DNA of 64,000 nucleotides, from the NCBI GenBank assembly GCA_013416795.1, contig RQSC01001302.1, forward strand, positions 1 to 64,000, read 5' to 3'. A program made the position numbers and the translations under genes. The notes beneath the pieces are model-generated. The model saw nothing but the letters and a program-made list of their open reading frames with translations, did not search any database and was not told the origin of the DNA. This DNA comes from Prasinococcaceae sp. CCMP 1430 (lineage: Eukaryota > Plantae > Prasinodermophyta). Below, piece after piece: positions 1 through 51,284 of this stretch (positions within the stretch are counted from its first letter, which is position 1; every line of letters starts with the position of its first letter).

Positions 1-1524
1 GCCAACATGAGCGTCGAGTACCAGCTGAGCGGCCTCACAGCGGGTGCAGAGGTTCCGTACTACTGCATGGAAGACGGCGATGCGTGGCCGTCGGTAGCGG
101 AACCGCAGCCCGTTGTCGGGTCATTCAACGTGAGCAACGCCGTCAAGATCGGCGAGAGCTACGACGCGGCGACCGGCGTGACCATCCGCGAGTTCAGCGT
201 TGATATCGAGATTACCGACGACGAATACATGATGCTCACTGATGGCGGCGAGCCAGACGAAGACTTTGGTGGCCTGATGAACGTGCGCTACTTTGACGAG
301 AAGGAGAGCCTGCACCCGGTGATGATGACGTTTGGTCCCAACATCACTATGGTGATCAACACCTTCTACGAGGAGAGCGTCGATCTTGAAGACTGGCGCA
401 CGCCCAGCAACTGCATTGCGGACGACCCCTACGCCTCGCACACGCCCACTATGATGGGCGAGGATCCGTACATGTTCGACCACAAGCGCCGCAGGCAGTT
501 GCTCGGCCTCATCCCCGTGGAGAACTACGGCGACTTCGTCAACGAGACGTACACCGCGGAGCCCTTTTACGTGCCTGAATGGTTCGACCCATCATTTTCG
601 GGCATCGGGGAAGACGACGACGAATACGACATCACGTACGGCTATGATCTCGTAGAGGGCGAATACATCGAAGGCGAATACACCTATGTCTGGGAGCCCG
701 ACGAGCGTCGCAGCCTGAGCGAAATCGATGCGATCGATGCCGACCTCGCGCTCTGGGACGGGGACCAATCCTCTGACCTAGTGGACGACGTGTTCGCGGA
801 CGGCCCCGCAGCCCTGCGCGAGCAACAGTCGGAATCTCAGGAGGTGAGGGCGCGAAGCCTCCTTGGTCGCAAGAGGAAGAAGAAGAATAAGAGCAAGAGG
901 AAGCGCAACAAGAGGAAGAAGTCGAAGAAGAGTGGACGCAAGTCATCTTCCCCACCGTCGTCGAGCTGCCCCGACTGGTTCCCCACGAACGAGTGCTATC
1001 CCACGGCCATTTCTTATGAGAGGGATTTTGAGTTCAGCAAATTCGAGGTCGAGATTATCACCTGGAAGGACAACTGCGGTATCAAGGAGGCGAAGGCCCA
1101 GGGTGGCAGGTGCCCTGGCGGCGGCGAGCTGTACGGGACCTGCGGTGGGTCGACGCCCCTGCTCTGCCGCGGCAGCTGGGGCTTCCGCTGCGCCATCGGC
1201 TGCGAGTGGAGCTTCGAAGATTTCCTTCCCAACAGTATTAGGAAACATCTCTACAAGTGGTTCAATCTGGACGCCACGCTCTTTATCGAGCTCGGCTATA
1301 CGTACCCCAGCGTCCTTGACATCAAGGGCGGCGGCAAGATCGGCAAAATCAAGAAAGTGTGGTGGGGCGGAAAGAAGGGTGCCGAGGTAGGCTTCGAGGC
1401 CCAGGGCACCCTCGACGTCGCCAAGAAGAAGCTCGGCTTCAAGCTTTCCGTCGGCGGCAAGGCGTGCTGGGGCGGTTGCATCAGTCTGAGCTTCACCGTG
1501 CTCAACCTGTCGCAGAGGTTTTAG
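1..1524 (+). CDS. Paralogue A (5'-partial) of an uncharacterised EF-hand/TM-anchored, RxxL-processed, Cys-rich C-terminal protein family
   Basis: The open frame runs in from the window edge. The protein aligns along its full length with the C-terminal ~500 aa of the 18816..21760 gene, sharing blocks such as FYEESVDLEDWRTPSNCIADDPYASHTPTMMGEDPYMFDHKRRRQL and PLLCRGSWGFRCAIGCEW. The 3' UTR is also homologous to 21761-21910. Confidence 0.85.
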   Translation, partial: ANMSVEYQLSGLTAGAEVPYYCMEDGDAWPSVAEPQPVVGSFNVSNAVKIGESYDAATGVTIREFSVDIEITDDEYMMLTDGGEPDEDFGGLMNVRYFDEKESLHPVMMTFGPNITMVINTFYEESVDLEDWRTPSNCIADDPYASHTPTMMGEDPYMFDHKRRRQLLGLIPVENYGDFVNETYTAEPFYVPEWFDPSFSGIGEDDDEYDITYGYDLVEGEYIEGEYTYVWEPDERRSLSEIDAIDADLALWDGDQSSDLVDDVFADGPAALREQQSESQEVRARSLLGRKRKKKNKSKRKRNKRKKSKKSGRKSSSPPSSSCPDWFPTNECYPTAISYERDFEFSKFEVEIITWKDNCGIKEAKAQGGRCPGGGELYGTCGGSTPLLCRGSWGFRCAIGCEWSFEDFLPNSIRKHLYKWFNLDATLFIELGYTYPSVLDIKGGGKIGKIKKVWWGGKKGAEVGFEAQGTLDVAKKKLGFKLSVGGKACWGGCISLSFTVLNLSQRF

Positions 1525-2553
1525 AACAGCGCAGACACGTCGGCGAGAGTTGAGCGAGGTTTTTTGGCAGGGGGTGTCGGCGCTCTGTGTGCGCGGCTCG
1601 GCTCGGCAGGGCCCTTTGGGCTTCAGCAGCACGCATGCGGGCGGCGGCGCCTTAGGAGCTGTCTCGGGCGGATGAAGTCTCCACCACATTGCCAATCTTT
1701 ACTGTAACACACCTACTGTATGTCTTGTGTGTGCAGGATTGCCGCAGCGTCGCGGTCGCGTGCGTACTCTTCCCGCGCCTGCCTTTTTTTCCGCCTTTCT
1801 TGCCGGCCTTTGGCCGCCTGTGTCGCAACACCGCGGCAGACGATCTCACCGCGAGAGCGTTTTTATTTTTGGTACGCTCCAAAACGCCATCAAAAAGCAC
1901 GCATACCCGGCAACGCTCGAACGAACCGCACGCCTGCGCGGTCTAACAGGTGCCAAGATTCTCCAAGATTTTCCACGCTTCACCGGAGAGGATCACCCAA
2001 CAAGCCAACACGGATTTTTGAGAGTGTGACGTCATTGTTATGGCGCTGGGACACGTGGCTCCGCGGGACGTAGCAGAGCGCGTAATGAGCACTCCCTCAC
2101 AACGGGCTCCTGCGAAGCCTACACAGTCGTGCCAACGGCGCGTTCCTGTCCCTGTCCCCCCGCCACGCATGGTGCATGAGTCCCCCGTGGGTACGTCATC
2201 CGTCGGGGCGCATCCGTCGGATGCGTACGCCCGCTCAGCTCACGCCGCCGCGCCGCGACGCCGCAGCGGCCGCGGCCGTTCCCCGACGCGCGGTCGCGCG
2301 CGCGCAATTTTTCGGTTTGCCCGGCCTGGCGCTGTCGCGTGGTCTTGCACGCACGGCATGTGCTGCTGCGAAGGGTGCGATCACAGTGCGGCATGTGCAA
2401 GTAGGGCGTCCGAGGGATCGCCCCGAGGTGTCCTTTGGCGTGTTTGTTCTCGTCGCGGTGGGCGTGAGAGGGTGGGACTGCGGCGGGGGGAGGTTCGGGT
2501 GTGGATTTCGTTTTTTGTGTGGCGGTTGGGGGGACGGCCGCGGCGCGGCGTTC

Positions 2554-3773
2554 CACGGCGCCGTGGAACGGCGTCGCGCGGGCTTTGGGGTGTCAGGAGG
2601 GTTTGTTGGCGGCTCGAAGAGCGTGCGTGCAGACGTGCGACCTTCGCACGCCTGGGTTTGGGTTGGGACGGAGGCCTGCGCGCAGCGAGGCCGGCGCGCG
2701 CCCTCCCAAGGGCTGGTGCAGCGCGCCGGCGTCGGCGCCGGCCCCCCGGCCGGTGGCGCCTCCGGCGAGGAAGCATCCCCCTCCCCCCCACCCCTCCGGC
2801 GGCGAATGGCCGCGCTACGAGCTCGGAAGCGTGCGAGCGCGCGTGCTGGCGCGTGTCGGCGGGGCAGGAGACGAGACGTGGCGTGTGCGCGTGCGCGCGC
2901 GCCGGGGCGCACGCGCACGCGCGTGGTACGGGCGGGCCGGACGCTTTCTATCTCCCCCCAAATGTTCTCGGCCGGCCGCAGACGGCACGGCCCGCACTCG
3001 CCGTAGTGCGCGCGCGTGCCACAGCGCGCCGCAGGCGCGCGCGCGGCGGCTCGGCACCCCTGCCGCAGCTGCTCGCCCGCAGTCAGCCATGGGGAGGTCG
3101 TCGAGCGATGGGTTCTCGCCTGCGATCGCCTCGATGATCGCGGAGGAGGCCGGCGTGGAGCTCACTCCCGTGCTGGTCGCGGCGCTGGCCGCCAAGGCCA
3201 ACGAGGGGGCCAGCCACGTCGAAATGGGTGAGGGCGCGAGCGCCGGAGCCGCGCACTCGGCTCGCGCGCGTCTGCTGCGCAGCTCCTATTGCTGCGCGCG
3301 CGCGTGGATGGCCGCACGGATGCACGGGGCGGATGCGTGCGCGCGCGCTTGGCCGGCTGCGCGCGCAATGGTGGCGCTCGGCGCTGACGCGTGCGCGCAT
3401 ACGCCGCCTGCCCTCGACGCTCCTCTCCAGTCTCCCTCGCGAGAGAGCTCGGCGCACACTCGACAGGCAAGTCTGCTAGCATGAAGCTCGATTCGTTCCC
3501 GCCGGCGGTGCAGGAGATGCTCCTGGCCTTCGACCAGGACGGCGACGGCACGGTGGATCCCCATGAGATTGGGCGCGCTGCGGAGCTGTACCACCAGTCC
3601 AAGCAGAAGACCAAGCAGCTGGGTCGGCTGGTCTTCTTCCTGTTGATCATGCTCTTGCTCATGCTGGCGGCCATCACGGGCACGACCTTTGCGGTCGTGG
3701 AGCTGAGCAAGGAGACCCACACCTCGAGCGACGGCGTGACGACCGTCGCCGGCCAGGAGGGCGTGGTGGCCAA
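2554..3773 (+). repeat. Segmental duplication, near-identical to 18281..19674 (upstream region, exon 1, intron and start of exon 2)
   Basis: Direct sequence match at offset 15727 (offset 15901 after the extra intron copy). Only a few substitutions in exon 1 and one 55-nt complemented patch differ. Confidence 0.95.
3089..3773 (+). CDS. Paralogue B (3'-partial, runs into the N gap): exon 3089-3227, intron 3228-3430, exon 3431->3773
   Basis: ATG at 3089 (MGRSSSDG...), GTGAG donor at 3228, ctcctctccAG acceptor at 3430, and the frame is preserved into MKLDSFPP. It has an EF-hand-like loop DQDGDGTVDPHE and a hydrophobic helix LVFFLLIMLLLMLAAITGTTFAVV. Positions 3481-3773 are identical to 19382-19674. 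Confidence 0.75.
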
Positions 3774-4758: not shown

Positions 4759-6733
4759 ATGGCGGTGGCGCACGCGTTCGTGCAGCGTGTGGTCATGAGC
4801 GCACCGGCGGCGCTGAGCGCCTGCCTCGCGTTGGCAGCGGCGGTGCTCACGCCCGGCGTGGGCGCCGCGCTCGCTCTTCCGCCGCGCGGGCCGCTGTGGG
4901 CGCTCGCCGTCGCGTACGCCGGTGCGCGCGCAGGCGGCGCAGCCGCCGCAGCCGCGCGCGCGCCGCCGCTCGTTGGCATGCTCCTCGCAGGCGCGCTACT
5001 ACGCAATGCGGCGCCCGCGGCATCCGCGCTGCGTGACGGCATGCCCGCCGCGCTGGCGTCCTTCGCCCGATCGCTCGCCCTCGCCGTCATCCTCGTGCGT
5101 GCCGGCCTCGCGCTCGATGCTGGCGCGGTGCGCGCACTCGGTGGCGCGTGCGCGAGGCTCGCCGCGTTGCCCGCACTCGCCGAGGCTGCCGCAGCGGGCG
5201 GAGTGGCCTCCGCGCTCTTTGGCATGGACGCTGCGTGGGCCGGCGCGGCGGGCTTCATGCTTGCGGCCATCTCGCCGGCCGTCGTCGTGCCGGGTGCGCT
5301 TGCGCTCGCCGCCGAAGGCTACGGCGGCCGCGCGGATGGCGGCGACGTGCTCGCACTCGTTACGGCGGCCACGCCGCTCGACGACGCGCTCGCCATTGCA
5401 GGCTTTGGCACGTGCCTCGCACTCTCGAGCGCCGGCGCGGGCGGCGGAGCGGCCGCGGCCGCGCTCGCGCCTGCAAAGTTGCTCGCGGGCATCGCCTCAG
5501 GGATCGCGCTCGGCGGGGCGGTCGCACTCGCGCTGCCGCCCGACGGTGAAAGTGACAGCGTTGGCACCGACCGACCGGCAGAAGCAGCAGTAGGGGGATG
5601 GCGAGCGCGCTCGCGTGCGCTTGCGTGCGCCGCGCTGCACGGGGCGCGCGCCGCTCGCGGCGACGAGGTGGCGTCGCCGTCGGCGTTGGCGTCGGCGCGG
5701 TGCGCGCTGCTGTCTCTCGCCGCGCTGGCAGGAGTGCTCGCCAGCGCCGAGCTCGACTTTGGCGGCGCTGGCGCGCTTGCCGCGCTCGCGGCGGCCGTCG
5801 TCGCCTCGGCCGCGTGGGGCGGCGCCGCGAGCGACCCCACGCGCGCCGTCGCTGCACGCGCCGCCGCGCTGTGGAACGGTGCCGTCGGACCTTTGCTCTT
5901 CGGACTCGTAGGCGCCAGCGTCGACGTGGGCGTCCTCGATGGGACGACGGTTGCGCGCGGGCTCGCCGTGCTCGNCTCCGCCGCTGGCCCTTCCCGCCCG
6001 CTCGTACATGGCGGCCGTCGCCGCCTCGGCCGCGTGGGGCGGCGCCGCGAGCGACCCCACGCGCGCCGTCGCTGCACGCGCCGCCGCGCTGTGGAACGGT
6101 GCCGTCGGACCTTTGCTCTTCGGACTCGTAGGCGCCAGCGTCGACGTGGGCGTCCTCGATGGGACGACGGTTGCGCGCGGGCTCGCCGTGCTCGCCGTGG
6201 GCGCCGCCACGCGCTTTGGCGCCGTGATGCTCGCGACGACGCGGGCGCGCCTGTCTTCCCGGGAGCGCCTCTTCGTTGCCCTCGCGTGGATCCCAAAGGT
6301 GCGCGCGCGCGCGAGCGACTTGCCGTGCGAAAAGCACCAGAGGCTCTCTGCGCGGCACTGACAGGTTCTCGCCACCACCGACGCACCCATCGTGCAGGCG
6401 ACCGTGCAAGCCGCGGTCGGCGGCGCGGCGCTTGAGGCCGCGCGCGACATGGCAGAGAGGGCCGTGGCGAGGGGTGATGCGACCGCTGTTGTCGTCGCCG
6501 AGCGCGCCGAGGAGCTCGGCCTCGTCCTGCTCCAGCTATCAGTCCTGGCCATCGTGCTCACCGCACCTGTGGGCGCAATTGCCATCGCCGTGGGTGGGCC
6601 CAGGTTGCTGGAGCAGAAAGGGAGCGGCTGCGACGACGAAGAGGTGGGCGGGGCCACTGAGATCACAGCAAAATGCGACAGCGACGGTGCCCGCGAGGAC
6701 GGCTCCACCACATCCAGCGCGGAGCGGCTGTAG
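4759..6733 (+). CDS. Na+/H+ antiporter, SLC9B/NHA2-like (CPA superfamily); intron 6299-6397; true start may lie in the gap
   Basis: Motifs GMLLAGALLRN, LALAVILVRAGLALD, LAAISPAVVVP, GYG, TPLDD, LLFGLVGASVD, ERLFVALAWIPK|ATVQAAVGG and VLAIVLTAPVGAI match the NHA family. The GT..AG intron restores PKATVQAA. The frame is broken by a duplicated read overlap at the N at 5975. Confidence 0.8.
5790..6194 (+). repeat. 185-bp direct duplication (5790-5974 = 6010-6194) around the single N at 5975; probable scaffolding overlap artefact
   Basis: The two copies are near-identical at offset 220 and are separated by an N plus 34 unrelated nt. Confidence 0.85.
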
Positions 6734-9257: not shown

Positions 9258-9844
9258 GCCCGTGGGGCACTGCAGGCGAGCACGTCACGCGCGCCACCAC
9301 GGCCGCCGGCGCCGTGTCGGGGGATCCCCCTGCCGCCGCCCGCAGAGCACCCGCGCGCGCCTGCGTGCATTTTGACATACACATTAAACCCTAATACGTT
9401 AACCTCAAAACCCACACCCAAAGCCGCGCAGTTTTTTCTTTTCGCGCGAATTTCAATCGCAAAATCTTTTTTTTATAGCCGCCCGGCCGAGATCTCGGGG
9501 ATCCCCGCGGCGCGCCGGCGCTGGGTTCCATGCGCGTCCGGCGCTCTCCCGTGGTTTATCACATGTGTTTAAACCACATAATGGATTCAACTGTACATGG
9601 ATTCCATCTTTCAAAATGGAACCCATCCCTTATCCACTTCCTACAGGGCGCGCACGCGAGCGCCAGGCGGGCGAGATTGGGGGGTGGGGGCGGCGGGGCG
9701 GCGCGCTGNGCGCAGCGGTTGTGCGCCGCAGCCTGCCGCCTGGTGCAGGCGGCGAGGTCTCTGGGGACCTGAGAGGCTCGGGGACAGCGCTCGATGGTCG
9801 CTGACCCTCGCGCGTGGGCGCGCCCGCGCATACGCGCCCAACAG

Positions 9845-10828
9845 GACCCGCGCGACGTGACTGAGGTGACCATGCAGCCCGTCCGCCGCTACGACATCGA
9901 CGCGGCCATCCTGTTTTCGGACATCCTCGTGGTCGCGGAGGCCCTCGGCACGCGCGTCGAGATGCCCGGCGGCGTGGGCATCCAGGTGCCCGAGCCGCTG
10001 CTCTCGCCAGCCGACATGTCTAAGATTGCCATGGACGGCGTGGACGTGCGGGACAAGCTGGGCTATGTGGTCGAGTCCGTCGAGAGCATCGTGGGCGCCA
10101 TCGCCGCCGAGGGGCGCGGCGTGCCGCTCATCGGCTTCAGCGCGGCGCCCTGGACGCTCTTCTACTACATGGTGGGCGGATACGGCGCGCGCAACACGGA
10201 CGCGGGGATGCGCTGGCTGCGCGAGTACCCGGCGGACGCGAAGATGCTCATGGAGGTGCTCACCGTCACCGTCATTGAGTACCTCGACGAGCAGGCCAAG
10301 GCCGGCGCCGAGATGCTGCAGGTGTTCGAGGCGATGGGCAAGCACATCACGCCCGAGGCCTTTGACGACTTCGCGCTCCCCTACCTGCAGCGCATCGCCG
10401 CGGAGATGAAGGAGCGCCACCCGGACGTGCCGCTGCTCGTGTTCACACGCGACGCCATGTACGCCAACACGCGCATGCAGGAGGCCGGCTACGACGTCGT
10501 CACGCTGGACCTCTTTGCGGGGCGCGAGGAGACCCGCGCGGCGCTCGCCGCCGAGGCGGCGGCGCGCGGCGCCCCGCCCGCGGCCGTGCAGGGAAACTTC
10601 GACCCCAAGCTGCTGTACATCGAGGGCGGTGCCACGGACGCCGAGCTCGAGGCGGCCGTGCGCGGCATGCTGGGCGACTTCGGCCCGCAGGGTCTCATCG
10701 CCAACCTTGGCGAGGGGCTCAGCGGCAAGGAGGACCCCGCCAAGGTCGACAAGTTCGTCAAGCTCGTGCACAGCGTCTCGGAGGAGCTCATCGCGGAGAT
10801 GGGCGCCAAGGCGGGCATCGCCGCCTGA
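9845..10828 (+). CDS. UROD: Uroporphyrinogen decarboxylase, 5'-partial (N-terminal RQAGR exon absent)
   Basis: Motifs [51 protein letters not shown] and IANLGEGL. Acceptor aacAG at 9844 with a CTGAC branch upstream. The upstream exon was probably lost at the N at 9709. Confidence 0.9.
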
Positions 10829-12372
10829 GAGGCGCGACGGGGGGGTGAGGGCGGCGGCGGCAGCGCCAGAAAGAGGAGGCGGGCGCCGCCGCGCGTACAT
10901 AATTGATTTTGTTGGGCGCAGCGGCGCGCGCGGCAGCGTCGGCGCCGCCAGGGCCAACGCAGGTCCGCCTGGCCCGCAGGCGCGCGTTTCAGGTGAGGAG
11001 GGGTCTCAGTAGTGAGGGTGTGGCGCGGTCTGTACGAGTGGTGGCCCGGTCCGCAGCGCTCCCGCGCGCGCCAGACCAGCCAGGGGATCGCGATCCCGGC
11101 GATTTGCGCGGCCGCGAATTCGCGCGGCGGGACCGCGCCCGCGTCCGACCCAGAATCACATCCGAAACGGGACGCGCGCGCGCCGCGCGCGCGCGCGCGC
11201 GCGGCGTGGGATGTTCGACAGGGGCATGGGATTGGGTGGGGGCATGCGCCCGACCGCCTGGCTGTCGCGCGGCCGGCGTCAATCAATCATTATTCAATCA
11301 AACACGGACAGACGGATGCTCGTTCGTTCGTTCCGCCGGACGGACGGACGGGCGCCGCAACGCAACGCAACGCACCGACGAACCAACCAATGATGATGCA
11401 TTGGACTGGACCAAGACACGATGCCATAAAATGAGTCTTTACGGTATGGAATACCCGGGCTTACTTAAGGATGCCCGGGTTTACATAAGCTAAATCCCAT
11501 CCTAAAGCCGAAATGTCCATGGCCCACTCGAACACCAGCTTAAGGGATAGGGAGGGTGGGATGCTGCGGCGCGCGCTCTAGGGCACTCTAAGTCTCCCGT
11601 TGGTACGTGAGGAGGCGCGCGGAGGCGCGCTCGCCTGCGCTGTGGCGTCTGCCCCGCGCCCCCCGCTCCCCCCCGGCCGCTCGCCCGCGCCGGGCCGTGC
11701 CCCAGGCGCCGTTCCCCGATCGCGGCGCACGTCGCAAAACAACGGTTGAGATTTGCGTTGTTTCTGCGCTCGTTTCGATTTGTGAACATCAAATCGCATC
11801 CAGAGGCAGGTTACCCGGTCCGGTTCCCCGGCAGAACAGCAAGTCATGACTTCATGCGCACAGCCGCCGCCGCCGCCGTCCCGCCCGCCCCCGCCAAAAA
11901 AACATCACCAGCGCCACGCATTCAGCTTGCACGTGGGGGTCGGCGCCTGCCCTTGGGGAGGCCGGTGGGGCGCGGAGAGAGGGCGTCTGACATGGCGCGA
12001 GCGCCTCGGGAGTCCGCCGGATGCCGCAAGGTTCCGCTCGCTTGGGTGGGTGGGGCGCGTCGGGCGGCGCCGCAGGCGACAACAAAATCCAAAAACAAAA
12101 GTATGAACACACTCGGGGAACAGCGGGCGCCGGCGAAGCGGCGCGGAGGCGCACGGCCCCGCCGGCTCCACCGCACATCTCTTCATCAGACTTGGGTGCG
12201 AGCGGGCGCGCGCGTCCGCGAAGGGGCGCGGCGGCGCGGGCAAGCGCGACGAAGCGCCCGCATTTGTGATGTCATTGACGAGCGCCCGGTACGCACGCGC
12301 GCGCACGCCCAGGGGGCCGCGCCCAACCCTCCTGGCCCACACTTCGGCGCCCTCGGTGCCGACTCGGGCGCC

Positions 12373-15300
12373 ATGGCGCCCCGCAGCAAAGGCAACGGCG
12401 CGAAGGACACCGAGACGCCCGCCGCGCCGGGGCCGGAGCAAGTGAGCCCAAGCGTGGCTTCGGCCCTGGTGCGTGGCGATGGCGCGCGGCCGCCCCGCAT
12501 GCGCCGCAAGCCGGCCCGGACGCCCGTCTGAGGCCGCCGGCCGCAATCCACACGTACCCTTTCCGTGCCCCGCCGCCCCGCCGCCCGGCCGCTGCGAGCG
12601 AGCGAGCGCCCCATACGTCTTCTTCCGGCGCCTCCGGCGCGGCCTCGTTCCTGGCCACCGGCTGACTCTCCCCGCACCGCGACCACGCGAATGCGCAGCG
12701 CCGCTTCGACACCTTCAAAGGCGACGACGACGAAGCCCTTGCCGCCGAGTTGAAGGACGCGCACGAGACCGCCAGCATGCTCAAGAACGCGCAGCGGAAC
12801 GACGGCTCCATCGAGCTGCAAGCCTTCCCCGCGGCGGTCCGAAGCATTCTGGAGGCCTTCGACGTCGACGGCGACGGGAGCGTGGCACCTGTGGAGCTCG
12901 CGCGCGCCGGCGAGCTCTATCAGGCGGAGAAGCAGCGCTCCGGTCGCCTCAAGCAGCTGGCGATCGCCCTCGCGGTTCTGATGGCCTTCGTGCTGGCGGC
13001 CGTCACCGGCCTCACCTTCTCGGTGGTCGAGCTGAGCAAGGAGACCCACACGCGGGAGGACGGCGTGACGTTGGTGGCGGGCACTGGTGGCAGCAGCACC
13101 GGCACCGTGGCCAAGATGGCGCCCGTCGCGCAGCCGCAGGTCCTGTCGAGCTGGCTGCCCGACGAGGCGTTCGCCACGCTCGAGACCTTCAAGGCCACCA
13201 GCCCAGGCGGCTCCCACCTCGAGATGGACGTGCTCGGGTGGTACCGCGTGAACGAGACCGACTCGGAATGCAACATGTACGTGAGCATCGTCACCTACTC
13301 GGGCGTCATCCGCCTCAAGGGCGAGGTGATGACCTTCGAGCCGCTGGTTGGCAACGCCTTTGCAGAGGCTGGCTTTGAGGTCGACGCCAGCGGCCGCCGC
13401 TTGGCGTCGGTGTACGACCTCATTGGCCTCTTCAATTCGATCGAGGAGTGGGTCATGCTCGACCCCTGCGCAGACAATCGGCCGCCTTCCTTTGGCAGGA
13501 CCGATTTCGTGATGGAGTACGACGTCGAGTACAAATGCTGGGGAGATGAGTGCACGGACATCGAGGGCCACGCGCACGGCGCGATGAATGCCGACGGCAC
13601 TGCGCTTGTGGTCAGCCACCGCGCCGAGTACGATCTGCACATCGGGGCGGTGCTCGAGTCCTTCACCAACCAAGAGTTCAGGGGCTACGAGGGTGCGGCG
13701 TCGCGTCAGTATATCTACAAGCACGCAGGCGTCGAACTCGAATACCAGCTCACCGACGGCGATGGTACGTTGCTGTGCCTCTCGGCGCTGCCTCTGGACT
13801 CGCTCGCACGGGCGAGCACCCGCACAGCACGGCGCCGCGCCCTCGATGCGTGTGTGCCTGTTCGCGCACCGATCTAACCCCCATCGCTCCGACGCCCCCT
13901 TGTGCACAGCGTTCTACTGCAAGTCATCCATCGACGAAGAGGCCGTCGCTCGGGCGGCGGAGTCCACGCCGGGAATCGCTGGTGATTTCGACGTCTCGAA
14001 GGCGGTGCAGGTGTCGCGCAAAGTGGCCGATGATGGGCGCGTCCTCCGCAAGTTCGAGATCGTCGTCGAAGTCGATGCCGTCGAGTACGCGTTGCTGACG
14101 AATGACGGCGACGGACGGAACTTTGACGCAAACCAGACCTTCCTTAACCATACCATCGTCTACATTGACGAGGCCGAGACGGGCAACCCGGTGGAGTTCC
14201 GCCTAACTGAGAATATCACCATGAAGGTGACCAGCTATTTTGAGTACCCTGTCGACCTCAGCAGCCATGCGATGCCCAACTGCGTCGAATGCAGTGCCTA
14301 CAAGCCTGAGTGCCCCTCCAAGCTGCCCCAGACAGCGTACCTGTTCGACTTCAAGCGCCACGATCAGGAGGCTGGCATTATCGACGCCGAGTTACTACAA
14401 GCGTACAGGGACGGTACCTCCGCTGTCATGCCGTACTATGCGAAAGACCTGATCGACGACGTCGTGGAGGGTAGGATCCATCCTGTTCCGAATGCGACAC
14501 GGCGCAGGCTCGTCGAGGACACGCTCGACGGCGAGCCCGAGGAGCTCCAGGACCGCGGGCTGGACGTGGCCACTGCGCGCCAGCCCCGCAAGCGCGCTCG
14601 GCGCGCAACCAGCCGACGCGGGAGGAATCTGAGCTTTTTCAAGAAGAAAAAAAAGAAGAAATCAGCATCCCCCTCTGGATCAGATGTGAATGTTGGCATC
14701 GTCAACGATTATCTTTTCGCAGAAGACCAGGGTTTTGATGATCCCTACCCATTCCCCCCTCCTGTATGCCAGTCAATGTCGTATATTATATGTCCGTGGG
14801 ACGGCGTCGGCGACGCTCTACTGAACACCGGCGCTGACTTAGTCGGCGACTGGATCGACGAACAAGAGGCCAAGTTCAGCGCCTCTGGTCAGGACTTTTG
14901 GTCGACGGTGGTCGGCACGGCAGGTGACGCACTCACAGACACGATGGAAAACTTTGGTGTTGGAAAGTGCTGGGGAAGTAACCACTTGCCCGTTGATCCC
15001 GATCCAGAACCAGAAGAAGTTAATCTTGGTCTCGTGAAGCTCGAGATGCAATACTACAAGGGCGCTGCCTGGTGTGGAGTCCACAACGTCGATATTTCCG
15101 GTGGGCAGTGCCCGTGGGGGGGCGTGGTATTCGCCTCATTCACAGGCAAGACGCCGGCGTTGTGCGGCGTTACGACGTGCAACATGAAGCTAGAGGCGGA
15201 GCTGGGTTGCAGGTGGGACTTGATGCAAATTTTCAAGAGCAAGGCCCCCGCCCTTGTCAAGCCCTTAGAAAAAGCCGGGGCCCAGGCAACGCTCGAGTTC

Positions 15301-15555
15301 AAGTTGACATACGAGTACCCCGCCAGCCTCGGCCTGGCGGTGGAGGGCGAATTCAAGTTGTTGAAATGGTTCAAGATACCTTTCACCAAGAAATATCTTG
15401 AAACGGGCATTCACGTCAGCTTCGAAGCAAGCGGCACAATTAACTTGGCTGATCGGTACTTGCAATTGAGGGCCGGTTTCGGCGGCAGGGCATGCATTGC
15501 CGGGATCTGTTTCGGCGTTTCTATCACCTTGGCGTCGCCGGCATTCACTTTTTAG
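12373..15555 (+). CDS. Paralogue C (divergent) of the EF-hand/TM proprotein family; exons 12373-12441, 12699-13764, 13910-15555
   Basis: The GTGAG..CAG and GTACG..CAG introns join the ORFs in frame. EF-hand loop DVDGDGSVAPVE, TM LAIALAVLMAFVLAAVTGLTFSVV, the same ELSKETH...DGVT motif as B and D, RRL/RNL sites, and a Cys-rich C-terminal domain (GGQCPWGG, CRWD, RACIAGICFG). Confidence 0.85.
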
Positions 15556-16049
15556 GTATTGTTACTCGCGGCACGGCCCTTTCGCCGCAATACAGACCGC
15601 TGCCTGCTCCGACAGGCTACTACTTTGAGCCCAGGCGCGTGCGCTAACGCACAGGCCGTAAGACATCGACACTTATGGCAGCGTGCGGCAAGCTCAGTCG
15701 AGCTGGAGTCGACAGAAGACGACAGACTGAAAGATGCAATCGTTCGCCGCGCGCCTCCCGGCAGCCGCGTGGCAGTTGGATGCGGCCCGGACGTGGCATG
15801 CATCGGCCGACGACGCAGCACAGCTGCGGCTGGCTCGCCGCGCGGCAGCAGCGGTGGACGTCAGCCCTTTTGTTTTACATGCCTGAACTGTGTGTAGTAC
15901 TGCTGTCACGTACGGCGCACGGGAGTGCATCGAAGTACCCTGTGACTCAGGCATGACGCGCCTGCGCGCGCGTGCGGGCGTGCGGGCGTACCAACGCGTG
16001 CGCGCGTGCGCGCACAACTGGCCGCACGTTCCCTTCCCCCTTCCCCATC

Positions 16050-16960
16050 AATTTAGAGAACGTATCCACGCGCACGACGCGCTCCTCGACGCCCATGGAC
16101 GGGTAGCTCGGCGGCAGCGCCGCGTCGGGCGTGGACGCCGTGGAGGCGTGCGACGCCAGGCGTGGACGCCGTGGAGGCGTGCGACGCCAGGCCGTACCAT
16201 CCTGGCATCGCCGCCTCGTTCGCAGCGTTTCCGCTCTCGCCCTCGGCGGCGGCGTCGGTGCACTTTGGCCATTCGCCGCCCGTCTTTCCGAACGCTGCGT
16301 ACAAGGACGGGTCGTCCTCCAGCAGCAGCAGGTCCTCCTCGCACGCGGCCGCATATGTTGCACGGCGCGTCTCCGCCGACGCCGACACGCCGGTGGGGTT
16401 GTGCACCGTCGGGATGACGCAGTAGGCCTTCGGGCGCGGGCCGCGCGCGCGCAACGCGGCGCACGCGTCGCGCACGGCGCGGGCACAGTGCGTGCGCACA
16501 AACGCGACGGTCACGCCGCGCGCCTGATGCGGGCGGAGCGCGCTTATCGACGTGAGGAAGTTGCTCTCCTCGACGAGCAGCACATCGCGGGGGGCAAGCA
16601 GCGCCACGAGCACCTTGTCGAGCGCGTCCGAGTTGCCGCACGTGCGCAGCACGCGTTCCTCGAGGGGCGCGGGTCCGGCCGCGCCGCCTCCCTCGGGCGG
16701 CGCGTGCAGCATGCGCACGTGCGCGCACACCCAGTCGAACAGCGCCTGATAGCACCTGAAGATCATCTGGTACTGCTGCATCTTGTAGGCCTCGTCGTTC
16801 CTGCCGGCGTGTCCGCCCGCCGCCGCGCCGACGTGCGCGTCGCATGCATCATCTTGATGCGCAGCGACGCGAGCGGAAAGGCGTCGCTCGGCGGGGTCCC
16901 GCCCGCGAGCCACACGGAGCGCGGGTCGGCGAGCATTGGCACGAGCGAGAGCGACAGCAG
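16050..16960 (-). pseudogene. PLP-dependent class I/II aminotransferase (2-aminoadipate/aromatic transaminase-like), frameshifted and C-terminally truncated
   Basis: Motifs VWLAGGTPPSDAFP, GNSDALDKV, VLLVEE, IPTVHNPTG, LLLLEDDP and RVVRVDTFSK are split over three frames. There is a frameshift near 16850 and a 31-bp tandem duplication at 16128-16189. No PGLR-type continuation follows FSK. Confidence 0.6.
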
Positions 16961-17800
16961 GCTCGCGCGCGCCGCCGCAACGGGCGCCAACGGGCCCGCA
17001 TGGCGCGCGCGCCACGCCCCGGCGCCCGGCACCACAAGCGCACGAGAGCTCTCTCTCACACACCGTCTCCTTTCAGCGCACGCCTGGGCGTGGCGTGCCA
17101 CTGCCACGGTGCGTGCCCGCCGCTCGCGCGCAGGGGCGACGCGCGCGGCCCGCGCTTCCCTGCCGTCGGAGGGGCGTGTGGCCCCGCGCGTGGGCGCTCG
17201 CACCTCTGCCAGTGCCGCCCGCGCGCTCGCCCCTGTGGCCCACCGACGGCCCTGCCCCTGCTCTGCCCCCTCCTCCGCTCCGCTCAATTCGTTTTGACGG
17301 CGTGATCCAAACGCAGGCACACAAACGTCGCAGCCAGGCGTGTGCCGCGGGCGCTGCCTCCTTCGCCCGACCCTGGATATCAGAAGATCTAAAATATGCT
17401 CAAAGACACCCACGGCTGCCTCCGATTCCTCGTGTGGATCGACGTGTGGATTCGTTCGATTGCACTGCGTTCCCGTGCGGCCTCTCAGTCAGGGTCCGAA
17501 CACGCACGCATCCGCATCCAGTAGTGATCGTGGCTGGGCAGGCTGGGTTGGTTGGTGTGCCCAGGTTGTGCTCGTGCACCCGACCGTTTCACGCCCTTCC
17601 CCTCCCACCCTGCGCCAGGGCCGCGTGCCGGCCGGGCTGGCGTGAGGGACGGACGGCTCCCACCAGCCAGTGCCGCGGCGCCTGGCCGCGCGGGCCGCGC
17701 GGCGCCCGTATTCAGCGCGTGACGAGCCTACGATGCACTGCGTCAAACATATGCGTCGCGCGGCGCCGTCCCTTCGCCCCACCATCGGGCCGGATGCAGG

Positions 17801-17985
17801 CTCGACGTGCGTTCTGACGACGCGTTTCACTCTAGCGTTCTTTTTGATGTGCTGTGCGTGCTCGACGTGCATTCTGACGACGCGATTCACTCTAGCGTTC
17901 TTTTTGATCTGCTGTGTGTGCTCGGCGTGCATTCTGATGACGCGTGTCGCCATTGCTTTCGTTTTGATGGGTCGTGGCCACGTGC
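17801..17985. repeat. 60-bp minisatellite, about 3 units (third degenerate)
   Basis: ctcgacgtgc(g/a)ttctga(c/t)gacgcg... recurs at 17801, 17861 and 17921. Confidence 0.9.
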
Positions 17986-18815: not shown

Positions 18816-21760
18816 ATGGGAAGGTCGTCGAGCGATGGGTTCTCGCCTGCGATCGCCGCGATGATCGCGGAGGAGGCCGGCGTGGAGCTCACTCCCGTGC
18901 TGGTCGCGGCGCTGGCCGCCAAGGCCAACGAGGGGGCCAGCCACGACCAAATGGGTGAGGGCGCGAGCGCCGGAGCCGCGCACTCGGCTCGCGCGCGTCT
19001 GCTGCGGAGCTCCTATTGCTGCGCGCGCGCGCTTGGCCGGCTGCGCGCGCAATGGTGGCGCTCGGCGCTGACGCGTGCGCGCATACGCCGCCTGCCCTCG
19101 ACGCTCCTCTCCAGCCACGTCGAAATGGGTGAGGGCGCGAGCGCCGGAGCCGCGCACTCGGCTCGCGCGCGTCTGCTGCGCAGCTCCTATTGCTGCGCGC
19201 GCGCGTGGATGGCCGCACGGATGCACGGGGCGGATGCGTCGCGCGCGCGAACCGGCCGACGCGCGCGTTACCACCGCGAGCCGCGACTGCGCACCGCGCA
19301 TACGCCGCCTGCCCTCGACGCTCCTCTCCAGTCTCCCTCGCGAGAGAGCTCGGCGCACACTCGACAGGCAAGTCTGCTAGCATGAAGCTCGATTCGTTCC
19401 CGCCGGCGGTGCAGGAGATGCTCCTGGCCTTCGACCAGGACGGCGACGGCACGGTGGATCCCCATGAGATTGGGCGCGCTGCGGAGCTGTACCACCAGTC
19501 CAAGCAGAAGACCAAGCAGCTGGGTCGGCTGGTCTTCTTCCTGTTGATCATGCTCTTGCTCATGCTGGCGGCCATCACGGGCACGACCTTTGCGGTCGTG
19601 GAGCTGAGCAAGGAGACCCACACCTCGAGCGACGGCGTGACGACCGTCGCCGGCCAGGAGGGCGTGGTGGCCAAGACGGGCCCCGTAGCGAGGCCGACCA
19701 AGCTGAGCAGCCTGCTTCCCGACAGCGCCTTCCAGTCGCTGGACATCTTCGTGGTGGACTCGCCGACGGGCGCGCACCTGGAGCTCAACGTGCTCGGATG
19801 GTACCGCGTGAAGCCCACCGACAGCATCTTCGACGAGTACGTCACCATCATCACCTTCTCGGGCAACATCAAGCTCAAGGGCGAGTCTATGCAGTTCGAG
19901 CCGCTGGTTGGGAACGCCTTCGTGGAGGCTGGCTTCGAGGTGCGCGCCGGCGGACGCAAGCTGCACGGCGTGTACGAGATCATCGGCCTCTTCAACTCGA
20001 TCGAGGAGTGGGAGGGCCTCGACGTTGGCGAGGGGCCGCCCATGTTCGGCCAGTCGGACTTTGTGATGGAGTACGACGTCTTCTACAAGTGCAACGACAG
20101 GTGCTACACCGAGGTCTTCGAAGACACCCTGAAGTCAATGGTAACCACCGAGGACGGCGACACCGCCGTAAAGATCTCGCGCACGGCGCATCACGACGTG
20201 CACATCGGCGCGGTGCTCGAGTACACGGTGAACCCCGAGTTTGAGTACAGCACCAAGGTGAGCTACATGGCTGCCAACATGAGCGTCGAGTACCAGCTGA
20301 GCGGCCTCAGTCGCCCACGTCTCCAAGGCATGATGACGTACCTTCTGCCGCTACGCACCGGCAGAGCCTCGGAGCCGCAGCCCGTTGTCGGGTCATTCAA
20401 CGTGAGCAACGCCACCAAGATTGGCGAGAGCTACGACGAGGTGACCGGCGTGACGATCCGCGAGTTTAGCATTGACGTTGGGATCAACGAAGCCGAATAC
20501 ATAATGCTCACTGATGGCGCCGAGCCAGGCGACGACTTTAAAGGCCTGTTGACCTTGACCTACTTTGACGAGAAGGAGAGCCTGCACCCGGTGAAGATGA
20601 AGATTGGCCCCAACATCACTATGGTGTTCAACACCTTCTACGAGGAGAGTGTCGATCTTGAAGACTGGCGCACGCCCAGCAACTGCATTGCGGACGACCC
20701 CTACGCCTCGCACACGCCCACTATGATGGGCGAGGATCCGTACATGTTCGATCACAAGCGCCGCAGGCAGTTGTCCGGCCTCGTGCCCGTGGAGAACTAC
20801 GGCGACGCCGCCAACGAGACGTACATCGCAAAGCCCTTCTACTTGCCTGACTGGTTCGACCCATCGTTCCCAGGCATTTTGTCGGACTACGACGACTACA
20901 CCTATGACTACGCGGATGACGGCGAGGCCGTGCGCCGCACCCTGAGCGAAATCGATGCGATCGATGCCGACCTCGCGCTCTTGCTCGGTGACTCACCGTC
21001 TGACATGCTGGATGACGAGTTTGCGGACGGCCCCGCGGCCCTGCGCGAGCTTGATTCGGCGTCTCAAGAGGTGAGGGCGCGGAGTCTCCTCGGCAGGAGG
21101 AGGAGGAGTCGGAACAAGAACAAAAGGAATCTGCAGTTTTTCAAGAAGGCGGCCAAAAAAGCGATGAAAAAAGCGGTTACCAACCCAACCACGCCTTATT
21201 GCCCGGACGATTGGCCAGCGGACACGTGCTATCCAGACTTAAGTCATACTGAGAAGGGTTGGCAATTCGGCAATTTCGAGTTTGAGATGCACACCTGGAA
21301 CGGCGGATGCTTTATCAAGGAGGCGAAGGTCTCCGGTGGCCGGTGCCCTGGTGGGGGCACGCTGTACGGGACCTGCAGTGGAACGACGCCCCTGCTCTGC
21401 CGCGGCAGCTGGGGCTTCCGCTGCGCCATCGGCTGCGAGTGGACCTTCGAGAACTTCCTCCCTAACTGGATCGTCAATGCTCTGAAAGGCGTTGGCCTGA
21501 ACCTGGACGCGACGCTCTTCGTCGAGCTCGGCTATTCGTACAAAAGTACCTTTGACCTCAAAGGCGGCGGCTCGATTGGCAAAATCAAGAAGGATTGGAC
21601 GGGCTGGACGAGTGGCGCCGAGGCAAGCTTCGAAGTACAGGGTAGCATCAACGTTGCTACCAGGAAGCTCGGGGTCAAGTTTGCCATCGGCGGCAAGGCG
21701 TGCTGGGGTGGGTGCGTCTCTCTGAGCTACACCGTGGTCGACCTTTCGCAGAGCTACTAG
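18816..21760 (+). CDS. Paralogue D (complete) of the EF-hand/TM proprotein family; exon 18816-18954, duplicated intron region 18955-19331, exon 19332-21760
   Basis: Same exon 1 and splice sites as B, followed by a long open exon with EF-hand, TM, RKL/RRQL/RRTL/RSLL/RNL sites and a Cys-rich C-terminal domain. Confidence 0.85.
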
Positions 21761-22506
21761 AGCAGCGAAGGGTTGGCAAAAGCTGAGTGAGTGACGGGCT
21801 GGGCAGCGGGTGTCGGCGCTCCGAGCGGCTTGGCGGGCCCTTGGGGTGTCGACAGCGCGCATGCGCTCGGCGGCAGCTGAGGAGCTGTCGTGGTGGGGGG
21901 AAGTCTCCGCAGTATTCCACGCAACTGAACATCATTATCTTATAATCTTCTTAGTGACTATAATATAATAATGACTATGCATCTTCCCCGCGTCTTGCCC
22001 GAGCACCAACGCGCCCTCTAGCCAGCAGCGACACCAGCCGACCGGGCCAAGCAAGCCAGGCCGCGTCGTCCGTCAGGGGAGTGGCGTGCGCGAACCCGGC
22101 GCTCCTGCCGAGGCCCGTCGGCGCGTGAACCCACCCCTCGCGGCAGGCGTGCGTCCTCCGCGCTCACGCCGGGCCGGGCGAGCCCTCCCCGTGCGCTCCC
22201 GTGCGACCTCGCAGGCGGTGAGACGACGTCGCAGGGTTTCTCGCAGGCGACGGAGGAACACACATCGATATGACACGCACATCACATGCCCTTTCGAAGC
22301 ATTTCCCAACGATCCTAATTTTCGTGGAGGACTTCCGCGAAATAGGGCCGTTCGGTTGGCTTTCATTGGTGGTTTTGAACCTGCGGTTCGGGCGGAGGGC
22401 CGTTCGGCGCTTGCGTTTTCGAGGCGGATCGCGATCCGCGCCCCGGCCGCGGCGTCAACAACCGACGGCCGCAGATCCCTGCGGCGCTGCGCGCGTGCAG
22501 CGCGGG

Positions 22507-22543
22507 GTGTGTGCGTGCGTGCGTGCGTGTGCGTGCGTGTGTG

Positions 22544-22587
<44 letters not shown>

Positions 22588-22662
22588 CGTGTGTGTGTGT
22601 GTGTGTGCGTGCGTGTGTGTGTGTGTGTGTGTGTGTGCGTGTGTGCGTGCATGTGCGTGTGT
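22507..22662 (+). repeat. (GT)n/(GTGC)n microsatellite, intronic
   Basis: Seen directly in the sequence. Confidence 0.95.
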
Positions 22663-23091: not shown

Positions 23092-23129
23092 GTGCGGAGG
23101 GACAGCGCGCGGGCGGACGGATGGTGGTG

Positions 23130-23303
<174 letters not shown>

Positions 23304-23682
23304 GTTGTGTTCATCTTTTTTGTGTGCGTGTGTGTATGTGCAAGTGTGTGTGTGCGTGTGTGCACACACGTGTGTGTTTGAGTGCGTGTGCGGGCGCTTC
23401 TTCCCGCCGCTGCTGCTGCTCGCACGTGCACACGGGCGGGGCAGCGCGCGGTGGGCGCGAGAAGTTTTCCGGCGCCGCGCGCGGTGTGCGGCGTGCGTGC
23501 GTGTGTGTGTGCGCGCGCGCGCGCGCGCGGGCGGCACACGCGCGTCCGCAGCGCACGCACACACGGGCGGACGGGGCCGTACACGCGCACGCGCACACGC
23601 CCTTCGTGTGTGGCGTGGTGTGGGGAGAGAAGGGGCGGTCGGCAAACCTCCAGGCGGAGGAGCGAGGCCAACAACAGCAGCG

Positions 23683-41011: not shown

Positions 41012-41466
41012 TCGGTGCCCGAGGCCGCGCCAACGGCGGCGCTGTAGCTCTCTCTAGTACTAGACTAGAGCTAGCTAGACTGCATGTAGACTAGAGTGCA
41101 CTCATGGTGATCGTAGGTACCACGCGCGCGAGATGGAAGCGACAGGGCAGCCTCGACGCGCCCGCCAGCCCTCAAGCCCGGCCGGCCTGCCGGCCCCAGA
41201 GTGCCTCGCCGCTTGACCTCTGCAGCGTGGCGCGCGGGGAGCGCTGAGGTGCCCTTTTCCTCCCCCCTCCGGGAGTGGGCGCAGCACAGGCCGCGCCCCG
41301 CCCGCGCGCGTGCGATTTTGAACTGTCGCGTACGTTGCGCCGTTCCCCCAGCGCGCGCGCGCGTGCGCTGGTGCGGCGCGGCGGCGGCGCGCCCCACACG
41401 CGGGCGCGGGCGCGCGTGCGTGCTTCGCGCCCGAGCGGGGGGAGGCAGAGCTCCATCGCGGCTGCG

Positions 41467-45072: not shown

Positions 45073-45123
<51 letters not shown>
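45073..45123 (+). repeat. Poly-G tract (51 nt)
   Basis: Seen directly in the sequence. Confidence 0.95.
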
Positions 45124-50889: not shown

Positions 50890-50924
<35 letters not shown>

Positions 50925-51170
50925 ACGTGCATGCGTGTGTGCGTGCGTGCGTGTGCGTGTGCGCTCGCGCGCCCGTGAGCGCGCGGATGCGCGCGTGCGC
51001 CATGGCGCGGCCGGTGCGGCGAACGCGGGGCGTGCGGTGTGGTCCACGCACACACACACACACACACACATACACACACACACGCACACACACGCACACG
51101 CACGCACGCACACACGCATGCACGCACACGCACACGCACGCACGCACACGCACACGCACACGCACACGCG
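50890..51170 (+). repeat. Poly-C (35 nt) followed by (GT/GC)n and (CA)n microsatellites
   Basis: Seen directly in the sequence. Confidence 0.9.
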
Positions 51171-51284
51171 CGCGCGCTCCCGCTGCTGCGCCACCGTGCG
51201 CGCGCCGAGCCTCAACGGATAAGGCGCCGCCATCACTTCCCATTGCGAAATTCCATCCCCATCAAAAGCCGTGCATTCTTCATA

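What the first reader, a model, noticed from the sequence alone, without database searches (positions are those of the whole stretch)
20310..20364. Second 55-nt same-order-complement patch, inside the coding exon of paralogue D
Seen: 20273-20309 equals 1-37. Then 20310-20364 (gtcgcccacgtctccaaggcatgatgacgtaccttctgccgctacgcaccggcag) is the exact complement of 38-92 (cagcgggtgcagaggttccgtactactgcatggaagacggcgatgcgtggccgtc), after which normal homology resumes. As written it encodes SRPRLQGMMTYLLPLRTGR with no stop. Complementing it back gives TAGAEVPYYCMEDGDAWPS, identical to A and restoring the YC also present in paralogue C (FYC). It has the same 55-nt length as the intronic patch 1,070 nt upstream, so the phenomenon is systematic. 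Inference: the annotated protein of D would contain about 19 false residues, and such patches would be invisible in single-copy genes.
Basis: seen in the sequence. Interest (0 to 1): 0.85.

Follow-up and report, generated by a model that had tools for sequence, protein, structure and literature searches.

The report
Complemented-not-reversed 55-base assembly error
A 55-base stretch inside an alga's gene is written as the letter-by-letter complement of its true sequence, which is a software error in the assembled genome and not biology, and it puts 19 false amino acids into the predicted protein.

Summary
Window 20310-20364 is the exact same-order complement (55/55) of 38-92, and the flank 20273-20309 equals 1-37. 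A second 55-nt patch lies at 19240-19294. The longest other complement-only match in the window is 17 nt.

As written, gene D (19382-21757, 792 aa) stays open but reads SRPRLQGMMTYLLPLRTGR at codons 310-328. Complemented back it reads TAGAEVPYYCMEDGDAWPS.

Five independent contigs (Logan, Tara metagenomes) carry the un-complemented form at both patches. A public EukProt protein (P0006) joins exactly that peptide to 481 D-identical residues downstream. D as written is absent from a 15-billion-protein collection.

Each patch is the 55 nt next to a point where near-identical copies diverge, inside a 92-nt exact repeat. Patch 1 sits in a 217-nt tandem duplicate that all independent contigs lack. 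This points to a contig-joining step of a graph assembler or gap closer, but the program is unknown.

No known polymerase makes a same-polarity complement. The verdict is an artefact, not a real feature. No annotated protein with the false residues was found.

First readers left about 40 similar, unchecked notes elsewhere in this genome (lengths 37-900 nt).

The parts
20310..20364 (+). Patch 2: 55 nt written as the same-order complement of the true sequence, covering codons 310-328 of gene D
   Evidence: 55/55 complement identity to 38-92. Independent contigs L001-L005 match it only after it is complemented back.
38..92 (+). Normal-sense copy of the same 55 nt in paralogue A (encodes TAGAEVPYYCMEDGDAWPS)
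   Evidence: A's translation is identical to the last 507 residues of EukProt protein P0010.
20273..20309 (+). 37 nt identical to window 1-37. Together with the complemented-back patch it forms a 92-nt exact A/D match that ends at the A/D divergence point 20364|20365.
19240..19294 (+). Patch 1: second 55-nt same-order complement, upstream of the D start codon
   Evidence: Exact complement of 3339-3393 and 19023-19077. Independent contigs match it only after it is complemented back.
19023..19114 (+). 92-nt exact repeat (normal sense) equal to 3339-3430 and, once patch 1 is complemented back, to 19240-19331. It ends at the junction of the spurious tandem duplicate.
19115..19331 (+). 217-nt tandem duplicate holding patch 1, absent from all five independent contigs. 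It is probably an unmerged contig overlap.
   Evidence: Alignments of L001-L005 jump from 19114 to 19295 with a 37-nt overlap.
3339..3393 (+). Normal-sense copy of the patch 1 sequence in paralogue B. B 3210-3773 equals D 19111-19674 exactly once patch 1 is complemented back.
19382..21760 (+). Gene D open reading frame (792 aa plus stop): a lineage-specific membrane protein with a weak N-terminal EF-hand
1..1524 (+). 3' part of paralogue A (507 aa plus stop), beginning at the first base of the window

Best explanation
The 55 bases at 20310-20364 are a software artefact of the assembled sequence and are not in the organism's DNA. The true sequence of gene D here is the position-wise complement, identical to paralogue A 38-92, and it encodes TAGAEVPYYCMEDGDAWPS. 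An in-place complement is what results when sequence held on the reverse strand is reversed but not complemented (or the other way round) as it is written out. Inferred, not shown: the error arose where contigs or graph segments were joined. Each patch is exactly the 55 nt of shared sequence next to a branch point between near-identical copies, as a k=55 junction k-mer would be. Each patch also lies inside a 92-nt exact overlap with what looks like a contig end.
For: The complement is exact at 55/55 against a 17-nt background maximum.

There is a second 55-nt patch 1070 nt upstream.

All five independent contigs carry the un-complemented form. For patch 2 the local alignment score rises from 144-175 to 285-315 after complementing back. 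For patch 1 it rises from 105-113 to 200-205 (alignment).

A search of the independent contigs against the complement-only window finds only these two places within the 8,875 nt they cover.

Every homologous protein that spans this region (17 of the 21 fetched) has the PYYC motif here, and D as written is the only exception.

P0006 has exactly the complemented-back 19 residues plus D-specific sequence: 481 identical residues downstream.

D as written is not among 15 billion proteins.

Geometry: after complementing back, 1-92 equals 20273-20364 and diverges at 93/20365. Likewise 19023-19114 equals 19240-19331 and diverges just left of 19023/19240. In both cases 55 nt of patch lie next to the branch and 37 nt are normal.

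Patch 1 lies in a 217-nt duplicate missing from all independent contigs.

The same kind of unmerged overlap sits at the single N at 5975.

By established knowledge, template-directed synthesis is antiparallel. Copying can therefore yield a reverse complement but not a same-order complement.
Against: No raw reads of the sequenced strain could be examined.

The five contigs are 93-98% identical relatives, not the same strain.

The origin of P0006 (transcriptome or another gene model) is not shown, and it differs from D at six other positions.

The k=55 junction idea does not explain why many other branch points between B and D (98.6% identical) are clean.

Unchecked notes report other patch lengths of 37-900 nt.

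That window position 1 is a contig start is inferred only from the matching 92 = 55 + 37 geometry.
Confidence: 0.93

Rival explanations
1. The patches were introduced after assembly by a data-handling step, such as a format conversion, a merging or editing script, or deliberate alteration of the file. In that case they are unrelated to assembly-graph structure. This is still an artefact, but with a different origin.
For: Public proteins from what appears to be the same strain (P0006, P0010) carry the correct residues. Some version of the data is therefore clean. Unchecked notes report patches in single-copy conserved genes and of many lengths.
Against: Both patches are flush with branch points of exact repeats and share the 55 + 37 = 92 geometry. 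Patch 1 sits inside a mis-joined duplicate. Random placement would rarely produce this.
Confidence: 0.06
2. Colour-space (di-base) decoding error. In SOLiD encoding a complemented stretch has the same colours as the true one except at its two ends, so two colour errors could produce an in-place complement.
For: It would explain in-place complements of arbitrary length, and also 'reversed but not complemented' blocks (note s1-399940). This rests on my own knowledge of the encoding.
Against: The other two base permutations that such errors should produce equally often (A<>C/G<>T and A<>G/C<>T) give no match beyond the 13-18 nt seen by chance. This holds within the window and against the independent contigs. 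The test has low power, with only about 8.9 kb comparable. Nothing indicates that SOLiD data were used.
Confidence: 0.03
3. The sequence is real. Gene D truly carries this stretch, made by some unknown mutational process, and encodes SRPRLQGMMTYLLPLRTGR.
For: The frame stays open through the patch.
Against: No known copying mechanism gives a same-polarity complement. All 19 residues of a conserved PYYC-containing segment are replaced. The same thing occurs in non-coding sequence 1070 nt upstream. Every independent sequence has the normal form. One of the three forward frames through the patch contains stops and the D frame does not, so an open frame is weak evidence.
Confidence: 0.005

Closest known systems
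Strand-handling bug in sequence software (complement without reverse, or reverse without complement)
   Same: It produces exactly this signature: an in-register, position-wise complement with perfect flanks.
   Different: I know this as a common scripting error, not from a cited source. A full-text search of about 8.4 million papers and preprints for six phrasings found no description of it as a genome-assembly artefact. The responsible program is unidentified.
Unmerged contig overlaps in scaffolds (artificial tandem duplications at joins)
   Same: Segment 19115-19331 duplicates sequence and is absent from five independent contigs. Segment 5790-5974 is repeated at 6010-6194 across a single N.
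   Different: Ordinary unmerged overlaps keep the correct strand sense, whereas here 55 nt inside the overlap are complemented.
True micro-inversion between paralogues
   Same: It is a short block that fails to align while both flanks align perfectly.
   Different: An inversion gives the reverse complement, and here the reverse complement matches at only 27/55 against 55/55 for the plain complement.

Membership tests
In-place complement artefact | The block is the exact position-wise complement of the homologous sequence, in the same order, with normal flanks | tested here: met
   55/55 at both patches, with flanks identical
In-place complement artefact | Independent sequence of the same locus carries the un-complemented form | tested here: met
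   L001-L005 at DNA level and P0006 at protein level. Reads of the same strain were not available.
In-place complement artefact | Recurs in the same assembly | tested here: met
   Two patches in this window. About 40 unchecked first-reader notes on other pieces of the genome.
de Bruijn-graph junction k-mer (k=55) written in the wrong sense | Fixed length at separate sites | tested here: inconclusive
   55 and 55 here, and one more 55 in note s1-406006. Other notes give 37, 39, 66, 73, 87, 102, 126, 143 and 900 nt (unchecked).
de Bruijn-graph junction k-mer (k=55) written in the wrong sense | One edge is flush with a branch point between near-identical sequences, and the block lies wholly in the shared part | tested here: met
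   Patch 2 ends at the A/D divergence 20364|20365. Patch 1 starts at the divergence left of 19240/19023.
de Bruijn-graph junction k-mer (k=55) written in the wrong sense | The assembler or gap closer used k=55 | not testable with these tools
   The assembly method and the organism are unknown.
Genuine inversion | The block equals the reverse complement of the homologue | tested here: not met
   27/55 at both patches
Colour-space decoding error | Patches of the other two base permutations also occur | tested here: not met
   No A<>C/G<>T or A<>G/C<>T match longer than 18 nt in the window, and none against the independent contigs. The test has low power.
EF-hand protein (Pfam PF00036), for gene D | Score at or above the Pfam gathering cut-off | tested here: not met
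   18.4 bits against a cut-off of 25.4, at residues 10-33

The most novel reading that the evidence does not exclude
The patches are really present in the alga's DNA, made by an unknown process that copies a strand with parallel polarity.
Probability: 0.004. Interest if true: 0.98.

Novelty: not a real feature. Interest (0 to 1): 0.12.

Why it matters
There is nothing biological to learn from the patch itself. In practice it matters in three ways. Gene D's translation from this assembly carries 19 wrong residues across a conserved cysteine motif. The same error type seems to recur across this genome. And it is almost undetectable without a paralogue or an outside homologue, because the reading frame often stays open and base composition and codon periodicity are preserved. 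Anyone using this assembly for proteins, selection tests or motif searches should first screen it. A simple screen is to align transcripts or relatives' sequences, plus strand against plus strand, to the complement-only version of the genome.

Tried and rejected
A strand-symmetric k-mer test of sequence direction (orders 2-5, 55-nt windows) gave z = -1.8 to -2.6 for patch 1 but only -0.1 to -0.9 for patch 2. It therefore cannot find such patches unaided. Its strongest outlier, at about 41043, is a CTAG-rich intergenic stretch and not a patch.

A scan of JGI metagenome contigs used a pattern that accepts either version of the patch (W/S coded) between D-type flanks. It found nothing, so it gives no information. 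The family has no JGI-sourced proteins either.

The colour-space idea was tested by looking for the two other base permutations. None was found.

A literature search for this artefact type returned only unrelated uses of the phrases.

Identifying the organism from uroporphyrinogen decarboxylase gave only about 60% identity to prasinophyte green algae, with similar values for some brown algae. The species remains unknown.

The flanks of the N runs were checked for further complement patches, and none was found.

Full report
**1. The observation**

- Window 20273-20309 is identical to 1-37.
- The next 55 bases (20310-20364) match 38-92 at 0/55 positions as written. They match at 55/55 after position-wise complement, 27/55 as reverse complement and 12/55 reversed.
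- A window-wide scan for same-order complement matches found one other such place. Window 19240-19294 is the exact complement of 3339-3393 and of 19023-19077. It is also 55 nt long and lies 1070 nt upstream.
- Apart from homopolymer and (GT)n runs, the longest other complement-only match in the 64 kb is 17 nt. The longest reverse-only control match is 19 nt. Chance is excluded.

**2. Effect on the gene**

- Gene D is an open frame from the ATG at 19382 to 21757, 792 aa.
- The patch begins at the second base of codon 310 and ends at the second base of codon 328.
- As written these 19 codons read SRPRLQGMMTYLLPLRTGR. Complemented back they read TAGAEVPYYCMEDGDAWPS. All 19 residues differ.
- The frame stays open, but another of the three forward frames through the patch contains stops. 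An open frame is therefore weak evidence of anything.
- D belongs to a small lineage-specific family, with only five clusters found among 5.8 billion proteins. It has a sub-threshold N-terminal EF-hand. From the sequence, it also has a hydrophobic helix and a cysteine-containing body.
- All 17 fetched family proteins that span the region (of 21) have the PYYC motif at the patch position. D as written is the only exception.

**3. Independent sequence**

- Five contigs assembled by others cover the locus at 93-98% DNA identity. They are two Logan contigs from SRR22824304 and SRR22824306, one from ERR11733625, and two Tara Oceans metagenome scaffolds.
- At patch 2 their local alignment score to the 175-nt segment rises from 144-175 as written to 285-315 after complementing the 55 nt back. 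At patch 1 it rises from 105-113 to 200-205.
- The aligned columns show only a few SNPs once the patch is complemented back. L001 and L002 share D's specific downstream sequence.
- I searched all fetched contigs, same strand, against the complement-only window. This picks out exactly the two patches and nothing else within the 8,875 nt of window they cover.
- At protein level, EukProt entry P0006 has precisely TAGAEVPYYCMEDGDAWPS, followed by 481 residues identical to D.
- EukProt entry P0010 is identical to paralogue A over A's 507 residues. Both therefore come from the same strain or a near-identical one.
- D as written is not in the 15-billion-protein collection.
One gap remains: no reads of the sequenced strain itself could be examined. 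The origin of P0006 is also not shown, and it differs from D at six other positions.

**4. Why it cannot be biology**

Template-directed synthesis is antiparallel (established knowledge). Inversion, template switching or gene conversion can therefore give a reverse complement, but never a same-order complement of a non-palindromic 55-mer. The same event in non-coding sequence 1070 nt away, with the same length, also argues against selection or coincidence.

**5. Where the error probably arose (inference)**

- After complementing both patches back, the exact A/D match is 1-92 = 20273-20364. It ends exactly at the right edge of patch 2, because A and D diverge at 93/20365.
- The exact match between the two units of D's tandem repeat is 19023-19114 = 19240-19331, which also equals B 3339-3430. 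It begins exactly at the left edge of patch 1.
- In both cases the patch is the 55 nt of shared sequence next to a branch point, and the remaining 37 nt of a 92-nt exact repeat are normal.
- The far end of that 92-nt repeat is position 19114 in one case. That is the junction of a 217-nt tandem duplicate (19115-19331) which all five independent contigs lack.
- In the other case the far end is window position 1. I therefore suspect position 1 is a scaffold start.
- B 3210-3773 equals D 19111-19674 exactly, apart from patch 1. The same sequence was thus written out twice, once correctly.
- A similar unmerged overlap flanks the single N at 5975.
- This is the pattern expected if a graph-based assembler, scaffolder or gap closer wrote a junction segment from its reverse-strand copy, reversing but not complementing it. 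A k=55 node would fit.

Points against this specific version:
- Many other B/D branch points are clean.
- First-reader notes elsewhere in the genome report patch lengths of 37-900 nt (unchecked).
- I could not learn which programs were used.

**6. Rivals**

- A post-assembly data-handling error cannot be excluded, but it fits the branch-point geometry poorly.
- Colour-space decoding would naturally make complement patches. It should equally make the two other base-permutation patches, and none was found in the window or against the independent contigs. That test has low power.
- A real sequence is set at below 1%.

**7. Detectability**

A direction-sensitive k-mer score did not separate patch 2 from background.

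**8. Context**

- The genome is from a marine alga that other notes call green. Uroporphyrinogen decarboxylase is at most about 61% identical to named prasinophyte proteins.
- Near-identical DNA occurs in Tara and other marine metagenomes.
- The species was not identified.

**9. Verdict**

This is not a real feature of the organism. Its value is as a data-quality warning for this assembly.

Noticed in passing
window 19115-19331: A 217-nt tandem duplicate upstream of gene D that is absent from all five independent contigs. It joins through a 4-nt 'ccag' overlap and looks like two overlapping contigs (one with and one without a 44-nt indel) placed end to end.
   Followed up: partly
window 5790-6194: 185 nt before the single N at 5975 are repeated at 6010-6194 (99.5% identical). 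This is probably another unmerged contig overlap. The 34 nt after the N match nothing and are not a complement patch.
   Followed up: partly
window 9694-11072 and 11073-17838: Seven independent metagenome contigs align at 98.6-99% only from 9694, which is 15 nt before the single N at 9709, and differ upstream of it. Tara scaffold L003 runs from the 11072-equivalent almost directly to the 17839-equivalent. The window therefore has about 6.7 kb extra, including paralogue C. This is either a strain difference or a mis-join.
   Followed up: no
window 1-1524, 2533-3773, 19382-21760: EukProt protein P0010 has D's first 309 residues and then A's 507 residues. B's upstream region is 98.6% identical to D's, and identical from 3210 onward. 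The paralogues therefore share a long near-identical 5' half that the assembly seems unable to resolve. A starts mid-gene at window base 1, and B runs into a 711-N gap.
   Followed up: partly
window 12750-15555: Paralogue C is split into two overlapping frames (12750-13877 and 13588-15555) near the position homologous to patch 2. This could be an intron, a frameshift or another assembly problem.
   Followed up: no
window 45073-45123 and 50890-50924: A 51-nt poly-G run and a 35-nt poly-C run, with long (GT)n/(GTGC)n tracts at 22500-22660, 23120-23360 and 50930-51190.
   Followed up: no
window 41040-41110: A CTAG/TAG-rich, AT-richer stretch just after a coding region. It was the strongest outlier in the k-mer direction test and is not a complement patch.
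   Followed up: partly
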